Source: Fonticula alba ATCC 38817
Lineage: Eukaryota > Protista > Nucleariida
Strand: one strand, 5' to 3'
NCBI GenBank assembly: GCA_000388065.2
Contig: KB932207.1
Length of the DNA stretch: 17,180 nucleotides
A program made the position numbers and the translations under genes. The notes under the pieces were generated by a model that was not told the origin of the DNA, searched no databases, and saw nothing but the letters and a program-made list of their open reading frames with translations. Below are positions 7,156-13,100 of this stretch, piece by piece. Numbering within the stretch: the stretch's first letter is position 1; the number at the start of each line of letters is the position of its first letter.

Positions 7156-10100
7156 ATGGGCCCCCCGGCGGAGGACGGCCCGTGTCCGGGAGATGACCGC
7201 CGGCAGTCGGCCTTTCGCCCGGCCCGGGCCCCCCGGGTTTCTCTCTCTCTCCCTCTCTCTCCGGGCGCGAGGGATGCGGCCGGCCCGAGCACGGCAGTCA
7301 CCAGGACGGCCCAGACACATCCTGGTTCTCCCCCCGCCCCCTTCGGAGGCAGGACAGGGAGAGACTCAAGCACGTCCCCCTCGCGCGCCCCCCCTGGTGA
7401 CAGACCCTCCATATACTTCCACCTCCCTCCCCCCTCTGCCTCCTCTCTCTCTCTCTCTCCCCCTCTCCCGCCATTGCCCCGCCCGGCGCGGCTCTTTGTT
7501 GCAGCTGCTCCCCCCCCCCTCCCCGCGCGTCCCAGCCGGTCGTCGCATGCCTCCTCGTGCGCGAGCGCTTGCGTGACAGAGGCCTCGCTCCCCTCCCCGC
7601 CCCCNNNNNNNNNNNNNNNNNNNNNNNNNNNNNNNNNNNNNNNNNNNNNNNNNNNNNNNNNNNNNNNNNNNNNNNNNNNNNNNNNNNNNNNNNNNNNNNN
7701 NNNNNNNNNNNNNNNNNNNNNNNNNNNNNNNNNNNNNNNNNNNNNNNNNNNNNNNNNNNNNNNNNNNNNNNNNNNNNNNNNNNNNNNNNNNNNNNNNNNN
7801 NNNNNNNNNNNNNNNNNNNNNNNNNNNNNNCGCCCCCCGCCGCTGCCTGATCTTCCTCCCGCCCCCCTCCACCCGCCCTGTGTGACCTATGCCGCCGTCC
7901 TTACCCCGACCAGTGGACGGCCGGAGCCACTCGCTGAACCCGAACCCGAACCCGAACCCAGCAGCCCCGGGCTCACCGCCACTCGGCCATCCCGACGCCG
8001 CACCCCGCCGACCCTCGGACGTCTCGGGCTTGCCATCGTCGACTGTGGCGTACCCCCTGTCCGCGGACGACCGCCCTGTGGCGGGGCCGCTGCCTAGCGT
8101 CTCTCCCCGGCGAGCCTCCCTGCCGGGGCCCTCAGGCTCCGCCAGCTCCACGCCACCGAGCCCGCCCCCCTCGACCTTCGGCTCGACCGGGCGCTTTTCC
8201 AGCCCGCCCTCCTGTGCGACGCCCAATTGGCTTCTCTCTCTCTCTCTCTCTCTATCACACACACACACACGCATAGGAATTCTCCCACTAACGCTTCGTC
8301 TTTCTCTCTCCCCCCCTCCCTCCCTCCTCCTCCCCATGCGTCTGCAGCTTCTCGCACATCGCGTTTCTCTTCCGGCCCCGGGACCCAGACCACCGGCGGG
8401 TTCCACCCCCCCAGCTACTCCGACGGGCCGGGGTCCGCGCCGTCCTCCGTCGAGCACTCGCCCTCCCGGGCCCCCAGCGGTAGCCCAGGCGCCCCGCAGC
8501 CGGGGCTAATCCTCCACCCACACGCTCGGTCCCGGTCCGGGTCTCTGGGCCCGGCCGGTGGGTCCTTCTCCGGCGGGTCCTTTGGCCACCCGCCTTCCGG
8601 GGCCCCACACGGCCACCCCCACAGCGGCGGTCTGCACCACGGCTCGGCCCCGGGGCAGCCCCCGCCGCCGCCACCGCCACCGCCACCGTTGCTGCTCCAC
8701 GGCGGACCCAGGTCACCCCCTCCCCCCCCGCCGGGGGCCGTTTCTCCCGCCCCCTCGACAGGTGCCCTACCTCCGGCGGCTCCGCCGCCGCCGCCGCCGC
8801 CGCCGCCGCCGCCACCGCCGCCACCTCCCCCATCGCACTTCGGTCCTCCGCATTCGCAAATGCTGCCGCCGCATGCCATGCACCTTCTTCGTCCAGGAGC
8901 CGGGCCAGCCGGGCCTCCTGGTGGACCGCCCGGGGGCCCTCCTGGCGGGCCGCCAGGACCATCCACCGGGCGCTTCCCCCCCGGTGGGCCAGCCGGGCCA
9001 CCGATGCCCCTGCCGCCGCCGCCGCCGCCGCCCCCCGGGCATGGGTCCTTCCGCGGTGGGGTTTCGACCCCGGTAATCCCCTTCGGGCCGCCGCTGTCCA
9101 TGGGGCCGGCTCGTGGACGGCCTGGTCCGCATCCACTGCCGCCATTTGCCCATGCACTGGGCCCCCCGCTGCCGGTTGGCCTGCCTGGCGGCCCGCCGCC
9201 CTTCCCGGCCTTCGGCATGCCGGGCATGCCATCCCCCCCACCTCCCCCACATCCACCCGGCATGGCAGCAGCGGCCGCGGCGGCCGCAGCAGCCGCCGCC
9301 GCCGCCGCCGCCGCCGCAGCCGCCGCCGCCGCCGCGGCCGCCGCCGCCGGCCAGGGGTCCCCCTCCCCACGGTCCGCATCTCCCCCGCCGGGTCTGACGG
9401 TGTCGGCGGCCGCGCGCGAGGCCAGTGCCCCGCCGTCGCCCTCCCTGTCAGCTGCATCGGCACCGGCACCGGCACCGGTGCCGGCCAACGCCCTGCCGCC
9501 CTCGGGCGCCGGGTCCTCGCGCTTGGGGAGTCCGGACCCCGGCAGCCGGTCGGCGTCGGTCGACCCGCTGGCCGCCCTTGCGATGACCGTCAACATGCCG
9601 GCCAATTACTTGACCTCCCCGGACTCGGACCTCGAGGAGGGGGAGATCTCCGACTCGCCTGGCAGCCATTCCGAGGAGGCGACCGCCGTGTCGCCAACCA
9701 CGGCGGAGCGCCCGGCCTCCCCGGAGTCGCGCTCTCCGGGACATTCGCCCACTCCGGAGGCACCGGCACAGGGGTCCCCCTCGCCATTGCAACGCCCCGC
9801 ATCGCCCATGCCCCGGTCCCCTTCGCCGGTGCGACGCTCCCCCTCACCGCCACGGCGGTCCCCCTCGCCGTTGCGGCCATTCGATGTTCTGCGCTGGTCG
9901 GCCGGGCGCTCATCTCCCCGGTCTCCTGCCCCCGATGGGCGACGTTCACGGTCGCGATCGCCATCTCGGTCGCAATCCCGGTCGCAATCCCGGTCGCGGT
10001 CACGGTCGCGGTCGCGGTCATCCTCGGCATCGCCGCCGCCCTCTCCGGCCCGGGACGCCGCCTCCCTCGCCGGGTCCATCCCACCTGTTTCTTCACAGCG

Positions 10101-13100
10101 CGCATCGCCCTTGCCCGCGGCCGATGTGTCCCCTTCATCTTGGCCAGCGGCCGAGCCTCCGGCCGATGCGCATCGTCCCGCCTCGCCTGATGCTCCCCTT
10201 CCATCGTCCGCGCCCTCCCCCTGGCCAGCGGCTCCCGGTGATGGTGCTTCTGTTGTGGCCGTCCCTCCGAAACAGCAGGCCGACTCCCCTCGGCCGGCTG
10301 ATGTGGCACAGCCGCCGGCATCTCGACTGGCGGAAGATGCCCCGGCGCATGTTGATCCCCCCGTGCCTGCCGACGAGGGCGTCAGCCGGTGTCCCTGTGG
10401 CCGTACGCATTCTCTCCGCTCCCCGCTCTCCGCTCTCCGCTCCCCGCTCTCCGCTCTCCGCTCTCCGCTCTCCGCTCTCCGCTCTCCGCTCTCCGCTCTC
10501 CGCTCTCCGCTCTCCGCTCTCCGCTCTCCGCTCTCCGCTCTCCGCTCTCCGCTCTCCGCTCTCCGCTCTTCTCCCTCCTTCACCCATGCGCCAGACTTCC
10601 ATCCCCCCCCTCACTCTCTTCCTAACCGCTCTCCTCCTTTTTGGTTGTCCCATTTTCATGTCCATCCGCAGAGGGTGATGATGGGAATCTCATGATCCAA
10701 TGCGAGCAGTGCTATGCCTGGCAGCATGCCTCATGCATGATGATCGACCCGAAGTCCGTGCCGGCGGTCTACCTGTGTGAGATCTGCTCGCCACAGTCAC
10801 ACGTGGCTCTCCTCCGGTCCATGGGCAGGCCGTTGCCCGAGGGGGTGGACCCACCGACGGCCGAAGCCAAATCCCCCGATGGCGATGGGGCCGGCCGGCT
10901 GCCGGCCGCAGCCATGGGCTCGCCAACGGGCACCAAGTCCCCGGGGGCTCGGTCGCCGACTGCTGCCAAATCCCCAACGACGGCCCGGTCGCCAGCTGCC
11001 ACATCCCCCCGTGGCGAGGCCACCCTCTCATCGCCACCTGCTTCTCCCGTCAAGCAGGAGCCCGACGAGGCGGAGGAGGGCGAGATTGAGCCGTCCCCGG
11101 CCGCCGGGCACCCGGCCCCGAGTTCCCCGATGGAAGTCGACACGCCCATCGAGCCGAAGTCCAAACCCGCGTGCGTGGTCTCCCTTCTTCCTGCCCTCTT
11201 GCCTCTCTCTCTCTCTCCCCCCCCCCCTCTGTTTTGCCTCCCGCCCCTCGCTCCCGAGCTGACCCATCATGTGTATCGATCCCCCTCCTCCCCTCCCCCT
11301 TGCTCCCGCTGTTGTGCTTTTTTTTTTCGCCCCGCGCACCTCCCCAGGTCCATCCCCGGCACTCCCACGAAAACCCCACCCAGAGGGATACCCGAGGATG
11401 GGGCTTCTCCCCGGCTGCCCCTTCCTGCCATGGAGGATTCGGCATCCGGGCCTTCACACAGCCATCAAGAGCGCGAGGCCCTGCTTCTGTCGGCGGCGGC
11501 GGCGGCCCATGCGCCGGGTGACTCGGCCCCGGTGCCGTCTGGGCAGCCTCGCACGGGCAGGGACGCCCCATCCAAGGCCTCGTCGCCGCGCGAGCGGACC
11601 CCCTCGGCCTCGTCGCCGCGGGCCTTCGCCGAGCTGGAGAGCCTGCTGAAGGATGACCTCCTGTACCACCCGGACAGTCGGTCGACCGGCAAGCGCCGGC
11701 GCATGACCATGAACAGCATGAGCGCCTCCCTGCCGATGTTCGGGTTGTTTGACGGGACGCCCCCGGGCCCGGGGCGGAGCGCCACTGCCGGGCCGTCCAG
11801 CTCGGCCACCTCCTCGCGGTCGCCGTCACCAGGCCCGGCATCGCGCGCCGACTCACCGGGCATGGTCGCCGCGGAGTCGGACGAGGTGGCCTCACCGGAC
11901 TCCCCGGCGGTCAGCCAGCGGCCCAGGCCGCCCCTGCGCCTGACCATCTCGCAGGACACCTTGACCGGGGCGGCCAGCTTGTCGACAAGCTCGAGCCGGG
12001 CCGCGCAGCAGCCCGGCACCATCACCCCCAAGGAGGACGGCCAGGGCACCAGCGACAGCGAGGATGCCCAGCCGGTGGACGCCCTGCCGTCGCCCATTTC
12101 CCCGATCAAGGACGAGCAGCCTCCCCCGAGCACCGGCAGCATGTCGCCGCCTTTGGTGGTCACTTCAAGCGGCCGAGTGGTGTCCCCCCGGCGAATGTCC
12201 CTCTCCTCGCCGGGGCGTCTTCCTCCCCCGGAGCCACCGGGGCCCGGGGGCGATGCATCGGCCGGGGATGCCTCGGCATCGTCGCCCACGTCGGGCCCCC
12301 TGGCCGAGGAGAAGCCGGCGGTCTCGTCGCGGGCTCAGCGCCGTGCGGCTGAGGCTGCTGCGGCTGCTGCGGCCGCTGCGGCCGCTGTGGCCGAGGCGTC
12401 CTCCAGCGCTGGCAGTCGGCGTGCGGGATCCCGCCGGCCCGGGCCAGGGCCGGCCCCGGGTCCGGCCCATGCGGGGGTCTCCTCGGCATCGAGGCCGGGG
12501 GCGCCATCGCGCGGGGCCGCCGGCAAGGATCGCAGCACCGGCGCCGGGGGCTCTGGCACGTCCATCTCCCTGTCCTCCTCGTCCTCGTGCTCCTCCTCGT
12601 CCTCCTCCACGAGTTCACTGCATGCCTCGTCGTCCGGCGCCAGCCTGGCCTCGCCGTCGGGATCGGTGGGATCGCTGCTGGGGGGGCTGTCGCGCGGTGG
12701 CGGTGGCGGCGGCGGCGGCGGCCGGTCTGGGCCCGGTGGCCCGGAGCTCACCTCGCAGATCCTGTCCCTCGGCTACACCGGAGCCGGGGGCGGCGGCGGC
12801 CGGCGCAAGCCCAAGATCTCCTCCGTGTCGGACATGGTCCAGCTGATTGTGCGTATTTCCGAGCACACGATGCGCGTGCGGTCGGAGATTGTGGAGCTCG
12901 GCCAACGGGCCATCAGCCTGCGGCCGGACCCGAACAGCACCTGCCTGCTGGTGGCCGCGGCTCTGACGGCCGGCGGGGCTGGCCATGCTGCCGGTGGCAA
13001 TGGCGGCCATGGCCCGGGGTCGGCGGCGCCCACGCGCGCCGGGCCGTCGCCCTTGTCTTTGGTCCCGCTGCGTGCCCCGGCATCGGAGTACCGGCTGATT

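What the first reader, a model, noticed from the sequence alone, without database searches (positions are those of the whole stretch)
9631..11087. Two ARS2-recruitment-motif-like EEGEI sequences bracket the PHD finger
Seen: [11 protein letters not shown] (LEEGEI at 9631..9648) upstream of the PHD and [11 protein letters not shown] (EEGEI at 11073..11087) downstream. Both are in disordered acidic context, in different exons and with different codons, so they are not a recent DNA duplication. Established: the short linear motif [DE][DE]G[DE][ILV] (EDGEI/EEGEI) mediates binding of ZC3H18, ZC3H4, ZFC3H1 and fission-yeast Red1 to ARS2 on the cap-binding complex, for RNA sorting, early termination and exosome targeting. 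The PHD retains the Met (LMIQC) and Trp (AWQH) that form the H3K4me3 cage in Set3/MLL5-type fingers. Inference: an H3K4me3 reader that directly recruits or competes for CBC-ARS2. I do not know of this pairing having been described, but I cannot search to confirm novelty.
Basis: partly seen in the sequence, partly recalled or inferred. Interest (0 to 1): 0.72.

Follow-up and report, generated by a model that had tools for sequence, protein, structure and literature searches.

The report
Two ARS2-type motifs on Cti6 reader
A slime-mould-like microbe's version of a known chromatin-reading subunit of a histone deacetylase complex carries two perfect copies of a short docking motif that other proteins use to bind the RNA-sorting factor ARS2, which may link the two systems but is untested.

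Summary
Observation confirmed. EEGEI lies at 9634-9648 in exon 2 and at 11073-11087 in exon 3, on either side of a PHD finger that an intron splits. RNA contigs confirm the exon 3 borders.

The protein can be assigned. It is a roughly 2,500-residue, low-complexity-inflated ortholog of fungal Cti6, the H3K4me3-reading subunit of the Sin3L/Rpd3L deacetylase. Four elements lie in the family's order: the PHD, the conserved basic core RRRMTMNS and two C-terminal helices.

Both pentapeptides match the published ARS2-recruitment motif exactly, the same form that FLASH uses. Two matches in this protein are unlikely by composition: 0.02-0.04 are expected, and P for two or more is 3e-4 to 9e-4. Their flanks are unrelated, so they are not a duplication.

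Support stops there. No close ortholog exists to test conservation. In about 125 fungal Cti6 proteins the motif is sporadic and, overall, no commoner than scrambled decoys. I could not look for a Fonticula ARS2, and nothing tests binding.

I found no paper linking Cti6 or a PHD reader to ARS2. Verdict: a real, expressed, statistically unusual candidate, about 35% likely to be functional ARS2 docking. The same window was noted before as an "unassigned" PHD/SR-like protein.

The parts
7889..8213 (+). Provisional exon 1 (ATG 7889). An assembly gap (N run 7605-7830) lies just upstream, so the true start is uncertain.
   Evidence: Reading frame plus a GTGCGA donor at 8214 and a CAG acceptor at 8347, with a CTAAC branch site. 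No RNA check.
8348..10402 (+). Exon 2: Pro/Ala/Gly/Ser-rich disordered region, ARM-like motif 1, an RS tract, and the first CxC of the PHD.
   Evidence: Pfam finds no domain.
9634..9648 (+). EEGEI number 1 (model residue 538), context [13 protein letters not shown].
9940..10026 (+). RS tract ([26 protein letters not shown]), encoded by a (CGGTCG)-like microsatellite.
10390..10402 (+). First zinc-ligand pair of the PHD (CPCG), at the end of exon 2.
10403..10671 (+). Intron 2 (GTACGC..CAG), which holds about 22 copies of the heptamer CTCTCCG.
   Evidence: RNA contigs begin to match exactly at 10672. The repeat at 10444-10569 made read laying refuse stretches that include it.
10672..10826 (+). 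Rest of the PHD finger plus its C-terminal helix ([18 protein letters not shown]...[19 protein letters not shown]).
   Evidence: Pfam PHD_5 5.7e-10. MLL5 PHD 5e-9. Family profiles score 78-80 bits.
11073..11087 (+). EEGEI number 2 (model residue 928), context [13 protein letters not shown].
   Evidence: It lies inside a spliced RNA contig covering 11041-11170 joined to 11348-11462.
11171..11347 (+). Intron 3 (GTGCGT..CAG, 177 nt).
   Evidence: The joint 11170->11348 is seen in an RNA contig.
11348..15558 (+). Exon 4: a long low-complexity region that holds the Cti6 basic core and the two-helix island.
   Evidence: (contigs along 11348-13800).
11694..11717 (+). RRRMTMNS, the core of the Cti6 conserved basic region.
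   Evidence: [KR][KR]x[ST][MLIV]NS is present in 79 of 80 family members downstream of the PHD. hhalign picks it. The basic region is described for yeast Cti6.
12813..12920 (+). Helix A ([36 protein letters not shown]), matching the family's KRMTxxEMRKRVRxxxEYVxRxQxE.
   Evidence: Best hhalign hit of the island, E 0.033. Regex found in no shuffle of 20,000. Predicted helix, block-mean pLDDT 65-71.
13155..13328 (+). Helix B, which contains [12 protein letters not shown] (13281-13316), matching the family's LTRELxxFQxxFG.
   Evidence: The pattern is in 85 of 99 family members and occurs once in this protein; shuffle P 3e-4. Predicted helix, block-mean pLDDT 54-81.
15024..15190 (+). RD-dipeptide tract ([14 protein letters not shown]...). 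The end coordinate is approximate.
15559..15737 (+). Probable last intron (GTGCGT..CAG, 179 nt). Not checked against RNA.
   Evidence: Frame-compatible donor/acceptor search.
15738..16210 (+). Probable last exon (Pro/His-rich, ends KRRFSAQ, stop 16208-16210). Total model is 2,520 aa.

Best explanation
The gene encodes the ortholog, in this organism (Fonticula alba according to earlier scan notes), of Cti6. Cti6 is the peripheral chromatin-reader subunit of the Sin3L/Rpd3L histone deacetylase complex. Here it is inflated about four-fold by low-complexity tracts (poly-Pro, poly-Ala, RS, RD, His-rich).

Shown: it has an MLL5/Set3/Cti6-type PHD finger that keeps the methyl-lysine pocket residues, the Cti6 basic-region core, and two C-terminal helices, in the family order. 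It is transcribed and spliced.

Inferred from yeast work: the PHD reads H3K4me2/3, the basic region touches the nucleosome, and the helices dock on Sin3/Dep1-Sds3.

The two EEGEI peptides lie in disordered, acidic, Ser/Pro-rich stretches about 250 residues before and about 90 residues after the PHD. They are exact matches to the ARS2-recruitment motif. The most likely single function for them (inference, untested) is to dock the basic zinc-finger 'effector' patch of ARS2. Affinity would be micromolar and partly electrostatic, possibly tuned by phosphorylation of the flanking serines. This Cti6 would then bring together an H3K4me3-marked nucleosome, the deacetylase and the cap-bound nascent RNA, or compete with other ARS2 effectors.

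My confidence that it is a Cti6 ortholog is about 0.8. My confidence that the motifs really bind ARS2 is about 0.35, and that is the figure given for the whole statement.
For: Identity: Pfam PHD_5 is the only domain found. The nearest solved PHDs are MLL5, PHF20, Set3, PHF13 and ASH1L. The segment EGVSRCxCG...LMIQCExC..WQH..CM...P.VYLCEx[11 protein letters not shown] closely matches the fungal family, some members of which are named 'Cti6p', 'histone deacetylase complex subunit cti6' or 'CTI6'. RRRMTMNS matches a motif present in 79 of 80 family members. Helix B's pattern is in 85 of 99 members and occurs once here, P 3e-4. Helix A is the top hhalign hit, E 0.033. AlphaFold2 predicts two helices at exactly these places. 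Yeast Cti6 is described as PHD + conserved basic region + a C-terminal Sin3-interacting domain of two helices.

Motif: exact consensus, twice. EEGEI is the FLASH form, peptides of about 12 residues suffice, and proven effectors often carry 2-3 copies. Shuffle P(>=2) is 3e-4 to 8.5e-4. The protein has only 7 'EE' and 2 'GE[ILV]', and both of the latter lie in these motifs. No duplication explains the pair. Motif 2 is in spliced RNA. The position of the motif is known to shift between lineages in plant PHAX, so lack of positional conservation is not decisive. Scattered E[ED]GE[IV] and EGE[MI] sites occur in the disordered regions of basidiomycete Cti6 proteins. One site is shared by Rhodotorula and Sporobolomyces, and the motif ranks 1 of 60 against decoys upstream of the PHD in the first sample.
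Against: There is no binding data of any kind. An ARS2 ortholog in this genome could not be looked for with the tools at hand. No close ortholog exists in 1.8 billion representatives (best 61 bits, PHD only), so conservation of the two sites cannot be tested. Most fungal Cti6 proteins lack the motif (67 of 80). Where it occurs it is not positionally conserved. Counted over whole proteins, same-composition decoys are about as frequent: relaxed motif 16 against a decoy mean of 8.5 and a maximum of 25. The enrichment seen in the first sample did not replicate in 38 further members, where it ranked 15 of 60. The RS and RD tracts that give an 'RNA-processing' flavour are encoded by microsatellite-like repeats and may be neutral expansions.
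Confidence: 0.35

Rival explanations
1. Cti6 ortholog, but the two EEGEI peptides are fortuitous. They would be short acidic words thrown up in a very long, fast-evolving disordered protein, with no partner of their own, noticed because the reader knew the motif.
For: The motif is only five residues long and degenerate. Real sequences give more matches than shuffles predict: decoys average 8.5 where block shuffles predict 4.9. The motif is not conserved in fungal orthologs, and the first-sample enrichment did not replicate. The window was one of about 760 read in this genome, so look-elsewhere is large. EEGE is one A-to-G change away from a GAG run.
Against: P(>=2) in this protein is below 1e-3 even when shuffling within 10-residue blocks. 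Both copies are the optimal EEGEI, although Ile is only 1.2-1.3% and Glu 3.6% of the protein. No same-composition decoy occurs anywhere else in the protein. Both copies sit in the acidic, Ser-rich context typical of known instances.
Confidence: 0.33
2. Cti6 ortholog in which EEGEI is a functional acidic short motif for a partner other than ARS2. Candidates are a basic surface within Sin3L or on histones, or a CK2-type phospho-regulated acidic patch (S/T-x-x-D/E sites flank motif 1).
For: EGE[IVM]-type sites recur in the disordered regions of basidiomycete Cti6 proteins: Ustilaginaceae N-terminal 'KTE-EGEIP', a site about 40 residues before the PHD, and Sporidiobolales 'EGEM/EEGEI'. Cti6 is known to make several flexible contacts in the complex. 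The flanks SPDSDLEE and [10 protein letters not shown] are rich in acidophilic-kinase consensus sites (the kinase assignment is my own knowledge).
Against: No such Cti6 motif is described in the papers read. The fungal sites are degenerate and mostly fall outside any strict pattern. ARS2 is the only partner documented for exactly this pentapeptide.
Confidence: 0.2
3. Not a Cti6 ortholog but another PHD_5-type reader, a degenerate relative of Bye1/PHF3/DIDO or Set3/MLL5 that lost its other domains. In that case a link to RNA polymerase II or RNA processing would be the ancestral context.
For: The PHD region alone scores as well against a Bye1-like profile (79.6 bits) as against the Cti6-like one (78.2 bits). 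The top raw hits of the exhaustive search were PHD+SET and PHD+TFIIS_M+SPOC proteins. The helix after the PHD (HxxLL) is shared by these groups.
Against: No SET, TFIIS_M or SPOC signal appears with Pfam at E up to 10 or with a profile built from 13 Bye1-like proteins. Three further Cti6-specific elements are present in the right order.
Confidence: 0.1

Closest known systems
Fungal Cti6 (S. cerevisiae Cti6, S. pombe cti6; subunit of Sin3L/Rpd3L)
   Same: PHD finger of the same subtype, the conserved basic region core ([KR][KR]x[ST]MNS), and two C-terminal helices, all in the same order.
   Different: About 2,520 aa against 440-1,050 aa. It lacks the Dikarya motifs HPNQYTYR and WxLPxHLxHL. The basic core reads NSMS instead of NSRD. 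It has RS and RD tracts and two exact EEGEI motifs, which most family members lack.
ARS2 effectors carrying the ARS2-recruitment motif (ELM class LIG_ARS2_EDGEI_1: Red1/ZFC3H1, ZC3H18, ZC3H4, NCBP3, FLASH, PHAX)
   Same: Exact consensus, in the FLASH form EEGEI. More than one copy, in a disordered acidic context, in a nuclear protein.
   Different: Known effectors are RNA-decay, export or processing factors. None is a histone reader or a deacetylase subunit. Their motifs are conserved across orthologs and shown to bind, and neither is established here.
MLL5 / Set3 PHD fingers (PDB 4l58, 2lv9, 5tdw)
   Same: Best sequence match among solved structures. The pocket residues Trp, Met, Asp/His and Thr/Ser are kept, and so is the extra C-terminal helix.
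   Different: No SET domain follows the PHD. The loop between DDG and the Met is one residue longer.
Bye1 / PHF3 / DIDO (PHD + TFIIS-like + SPOC)
   Same: Equally similar PHD and following helix. These are readers tied to RNA polymerase II.
   Different: TFIIS_M and SPOC are absent.

Membership tests
Cti6 (Sin3L/Rpd3L subunit) | N-terminal or central PHD finger of the Cti6/Set3/MLL5 subtype (Pfam PHD_5) | tested here: met
   PHD_5 5.7e-10 on exon 3 alone. 78.2 bits against a 93-member Cti6-like profile. [25 protein letters not shown] is nearly identical to family members. The PHD alone does not exclude Bye1-like readers.
Cti6 (Sin3L/Rpd3L subunit) | Conserved basic region between the PHD and the C-terminal domain | tested here: met
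   [10 protein letters not shown] lies 276 residues after the PHD core. The core motif is in 79 of 80 family members; R, T, N and S are invariant in alignment A1. hhalign E 0.022. Chance is about 5e-4 by composition (my calculation; Asn is 0.6% of the protein). Only the core is kept: NSMS in place of NSRD.
Cti6 (Sin3L/Rpd3L subunit) | C-terminal Sin3-interacting domain of two helices | tested here: met
   Two helices are predicted at model residues 1453-1482 and 1563-1620. Helix A is the top hhalign match, E 0.033. Helix B's pattern is in 85 of 99 family members and occurs once here, P 3e-4. The similarity is weak, and the helix A regex was written after seeing the sequence.
Cti6 (Sin3L/Rpd3L subunit) | Physical membership of the Sin3/Rpd3 complex; H3K4me3 binding by the PHD | not testable with these tools
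   Only the pocket residues can be compared with the MLL5 structure paper, and they are kept.
ARS2-recruitment-motif effectors (ELM LIG_ARS2_EDGEI_1) | Match to (E/D)(D/E)G(E)(L/I/V) | tested here: met
   EEGEI twice. Consensus as given.
ARS2-recruitment-motif effectors (ELM LIG_ARS2_EDGEI_1) | Motif lies in an accessible disordered region | tested here: met
   No Pfam domain over either site. The surroundings are Ser/Pro/Ala/Asp/Glu-rich, with under 25% order-promoting residues. No structure prediction was run on these stretches.
ARS2-recruitment-motif effectors (ELM LIG_ARS2_EDGEI_1) | Motif conserved among orthologs | tested here: inconclusive
   No close ortholog was found. In fungal Cti6 proteins the motif is sporadic (13 of 80), not positionally conserved, and overall at decoy level. 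There are local hints: rank 1 of 60 upstream of the PHD in the first sample, and a shared Sporidiobolales site.
ARS2-recruitment-motif effectors (ELM LIG_ARS2_EDGEI_1) | An ARS2 ortholog with the basic effector patch in the same organism, and mutation-sensitive binding | not testable with these tools
   No tool gave an ARS2 sequence to search with, and only this window of the genome is readable. Notes of this scan do not mention ARS2 or SRRT. No paper holds both 'Fonticula' and 'ARS2'.
Bye1/PHF3/DIDO | TFIIS central domain and SPOC domain after the PHD | tested here: not met
   Pfam finds nothing. A profile of 13 Bye1-like proteins matches only the PHD region.
Set3/MLL5 | SET domain after the PHD | tested here: not met
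   No SET hit at E up to 10.
SR / SR-related splicing proteins | RS repeats together with an RRM or other RNA-processing domain | tested here: not met
   RS and RD tracts are present, but there is no RRM or other RNA-related domain. The tracts are encoded by microsatellite-like DNA.

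The most novel reading that the evidence does not exclude
In this lineage, and perhaps more widely given the scattered EGE[IVM] sites in basidiomycete Cti6 proteins, the Sin3L/Rpd3L deacetylase is physically coupled to the nuclear cap-binding complex through ARS2 docking on its Cti6 subunit. 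A capped nascent RNA and an H3K4me3 nucleosome would then jointly position histone deacetylation, or Cti6 would compete with decay and export effectors for ARS2 at promoters.
Probability: 0.2. Interest if true: 0.7.

Novelty: new member of a known kind. Interest (0 to 1): 0.42.

Why it matters
ARS2 sorts capped RNA polymerase II transcripts by offering one basic patch to competing effectors that carry this motif. All effectors known so far act on the RNA itself. A histone-reader subunit of a deacetylase carrying two such motifs would be the first suggested direct bridge from cap-bound nascent RNA to chromatin deacetylation.

The idea is cheap to test in vitro with peptides and a recombinant ARS2 C-terminal leg.

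The work also assigns a previously 'unassigned' giant protein to the Cti6 family. It shows that the PHD, basic core and two-helix layout of Cti6 predates the split between fungi and their closest amoeboid relatives.

Tried and rejected
1. The word-index search with the PHD and motif 2 region inside the 1,748-aa open frame found nothing.
2. The exhaustive HMMER search found 644 PHD relatives but no close ortholog, and not the protein itself. Site conservation therefore could not be tested.
3. Internal duplication as the source of the two motifs is rejected. The flanks are unrelated, and the local alignment score is driven by the pentapeptide.
4. Bye1-like and Set3-like membership is rejected, because the partner domains are absent.
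5. Family-wide enrichment of the motif:
   - Block shuffles suggested 3.4-fold enrichment.
   - Same-composition decoys removed most of that.
   - The strict motif looked enriched upstream of the PHD.
   - This did not replicate in 38 new members.
   I treat this as unproven.
6. Small HMMs of the C-terminal helices gave no usable scores. Regex with shuffles and hhalign were used instead.
7. The ESM Atlas feature search of the helical island gave only a sub-threshold, unrelated hit.
8. Pfam on eight long ORFs in 1-7000 found nothing.
9. The PDB profile search found no Cti6 chain beyond PHD relatives.
10. An ARS2 ortholog could not be searched for. No ARS2 sequence came from any tool, and I did not type one from memory. 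Scan notes and papers were blank.
I laid only 10575-13800, so exon 2, intron 1 and the donor of intron 2 are unchecked by RNA.

Full report
**What is in the sequence**

The window is about 70% G+C and has two assembly gaps, at 2527-3316 and 7605-7830. Earlier notes of this scan name the genome as Fonticula alba. I did not verify that independently.

On the + strand, long open frames are joined by short GT..AG introns. The donors resemble each other (GTGCGA, GTACGC, GTGCGT) and there are CTAAC/CTGAC branch sites. Together they give one large gene:
- exon 1: 7889-8213
- exon 2: 8348-10402
- exon 3: 10672-11170
- exon 4: 11348-15558
- probable last exon: 15738-16210

The model protein has 2,520 residues. 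It is 18% Pro, 16% Ser, 13% Ala and 12% Gly.

The Gly and Ile codons differ and the two copies lie in different exons. The PHD finger lies between them and is split by intron 2 (CPCG | [19 protein letters not shown]...).

**Expression and splicing**

Three small runs from 2012 of one organism hold contigs that match the window without differences. One contig joins 11170 to 11348, skipping 177 nt with GT..AG ends, and it contains motif 2. Two contigs begin to match exactly at 10672, with 23 and 136 unaligned letters before that, as expected for the exon 2/3 junction.

I therefore worked beside it, and exon 2, intron 1 and the last intron remain unchecked by RNA.

**Is the pair more than chance?**

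- Composition alone predicts 0.018 matches to [DE][DE]G[DE][ILV] in this protein.
- Shuffling within blocks of 10 to 100 residues gives 0.02-0.04 matches and P(>=2) of 3e-4 to 8.5e-4. Two EEGEI never appeared in 20,000 shuffles.
- The protein holds only 7 'EE' dipeptides and 2 'GE[ILV]' tripeptides, and both of the latter are in the motifs.
- In all six frames of the window the pattern occurs three times, and two of those are these sites.
- The flanks of the two copies are unrelated, so they are not a diverged duplication.

Against this stands the look-elsewhere effect. By my rough estimate a proteome of this size yields somewhere between 0.2 and 1 protein with two relaxed matches by chance. 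I could not measure this because the proteome is not available here.

**What the protein is**

Pfam finds one domain, PHD_5. The nearest solved structures are the PHD fingers of MLL5, PHF20, Set3, PHF13 and ASH1L.

The NMR paper on MLL5 names Trp141, Met132, His127 (Asp128 in the crystal complex) and Thr119 as the methyl-lysine pocket. In the alignment these correspond to W of AWQH, M of LMIQC, the DD of GDDGN and S of VSRC.

An exhaustive HMMER search found 644 PHD relatives but no close ortholog; the best score was 61 bits. Among the hits is a family of PHD-only fungal proteins that share DEGVTRCxCG...LMIQCExC..WQH...HxxLLRSLG with this gene. Expanding that family showed that sources name some members 'Cti6p', 'histone deacetylase complex subunit cti6/CTI6' or 'transcriptional regulator Cti6'.

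The PHD alone cannot separate Cti6-like from Bye1-like readers (78 against 80 bits). Three further family elements are present in the right order:
- The core [KR][KR]x[ST][MLIV]NS is found in 79 of 80 members. Here it is [10 protein letters not shown].
- A helix matching the family's KRMTxxEMRKRVRxxxEYVxRxQxE is the best hhalign hit of the region, E 0.033.
- A helix carries L...[LIVM]..[FW]..[KR][FY]. This pattern is in 85 of 99 members and occurs once here, as [12 protein letters not shown], with shuffle P 3e-4.

A single-sequence AlphaFold2 model predicts helices at exactly these two places, separated by a disordered linker. Confidence is modest, with block-mean pLDDT of 54-81 in the helices.

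Yeast Cti6 is described in the same terms: a PHD, a conserved basic region that may touch the H2A-H2B acidic patch, and a C-terminal Sin3-interacting domain of two helices next to the Dep1-Sds3 scaffold.

SET, TFIIS_M and SPOC are absent. I therefore assign the gene to the Cti6 family with about 0.8 confidence. It is four to five times longer than typical members. It lacks two motifs conserved in Dikarya, HPNQYTYR and WxLPxHLxHL.

**The motif in the light of the literature**

ELM lists the class LIG_ARS2_EDGEI_1. The consensus is given as (E/D)(D/E)G(E)(L/I/V) and is called the ARS2-recruitment motif.
- It binds the basic zinc-finger leg of ARS2 with micromolar, salt-sensitive affinity.
- A 12-residue peptide suffices.
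- FLASH uses EEGEI.
- ZFC3H1, ZC3H4, ZC3H6, ZC3H18 and NCBP3 carry two or three copies.
- Its position differs between plant PHAX lineages.

All known carriers act on RNA. I found no paper that links Cti6, Rpd3L/Clr6 or a PHD reader to ARS2. The one paper holding both Cti6 and Ars2 merely uses the cti6 promoter transcript as a decay substrate.

**Conservation test**

No close relative is available, so I asked whether fungal Cti6 proteins carry the motif.

- In 80 members there are 17 matches in 13 proteins, against 4.9 expected from block shuffles.
- The matches are not positionally conserved. The Ustilaginaceae N-terminal island 'KTE-EGEIP' fits the consensus in 3 of 14 members.
- Same-composition scrambled patterns are about as frequent: 2-25, mean 8.5, against 16 for the real motif after dropping a same-species duplicate.
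- The strict form E[DE]GE[ILV] ranks first of 60 decoys in the region upstream of the PHD in this sample.
- In 38 further members the strict form ranks 15th of 60.
- A site reading EGEM in Rhodotorula and EEGEI in Sporobolomyces is shared within one order.

I read this as: no demonstrated family-wide selection for the motif, some local hints, and therefore at most a lineage-specific acquisition in this organism.

**What could not be done**

I could not test whether this organism has an ARS2. No tool supplied an ARS2 sequence, I did not type one from memory, only this window of the genome is readable, and notes and papers were blank. ARS2 is reported in plants, flies, fission yeast and humans, so its presence here is likely by parsimony, but this is inference. 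No multimer prediction or binding test was possible.

**Verdict**

The functional inference remains a hypothesis.

The main gain of this stage is the identity of the protein. If the motifs work, they place ARS2 on a subunit of the Sin3L/Rpd3L deacetylase rather than on a free reader.

My estimates:

| Reading | Probability |
|---|---|
| Functional ARS2 docking | about 0.35 |
| Chance | about 0.33 |
| An acidic motif for another partner | about 0.2 |
| Not Cti6 at all | about 0.1 |

Noticed in passing
window 10415-10570: Intron 2, which splits the PHD finger, is filled with about 22 tandem copies of the heptamer CTCTCCG. Read in frame it would give SALRSPL repeats. Read laying refuses stretches that include it.
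   Followed up: partly
window 11694-11717; alignments A1 and A2: The Cti6 family has an almost invariant core, PKRRxTMNSRD (R, T, N and S invariant in A1). It has no Pfam model. It probably lies in the 'conserved basic region' that one paper proposes as a nucleosome acidic-patch binder. It is kept from chytrids to Dikarya and, in part, here.
   Followed up: partly
window 12741-13346: This is the only ordered-looking island in about 1,500 residues of exon 4. It is predicted as two helices. Pfam and the ESM Atlas do not recognise it, and it is assigned to the Cti6 C-terminal domain only through weak profile and pattern matches.
   Followed up: yes
window 10690-10841: A 154-nt contig from a 2025 wastewater metatranscriptome (run X4) matches the PHD exon at 99% or more. 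The organism or a very close relative may therefore live, and express this gene, in wastewater.
   Followed up: no
window 9260-9350, 8650-8830, 9940-10026, 15024-15190, 16060-16110: The coding sequence contains extreme homopolymer and dipeptide tracts: about 30 Ala, runs of 10-20 Pro, RS, RD and a His run. All are encoded by simple DNA repeats. The gene looks inflated by microsatellite expansion.
   Followed up: no
window 1-7000: Many long ORFs lie on both strands of the G+C-rich upstream half, but none of eight tested has a Pfam match. A 790-base assembly gap lies at 2527-3316. What is encoded there remains open.
   Followed up: partly
window 7156-7889: The gene's true start is uncertain. The first ATG of the modelled frame (7889) lies 58 bases after an assembly gap (7605-7830), and another note on this window starts the gene at 7156.
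   Followed up: no
P0188, P0190, P0193, P0240-P0242 (alignment): Sporidiobolales Cti6 proteins share an acidic site reading EGEM (Rhodotorula) or EEGEI (Sporobolomyces) between the basic core and the HPNQYTYR motif. It could be a clade-level short motif worth testing alongside the one reported here.
   Followed up: partly
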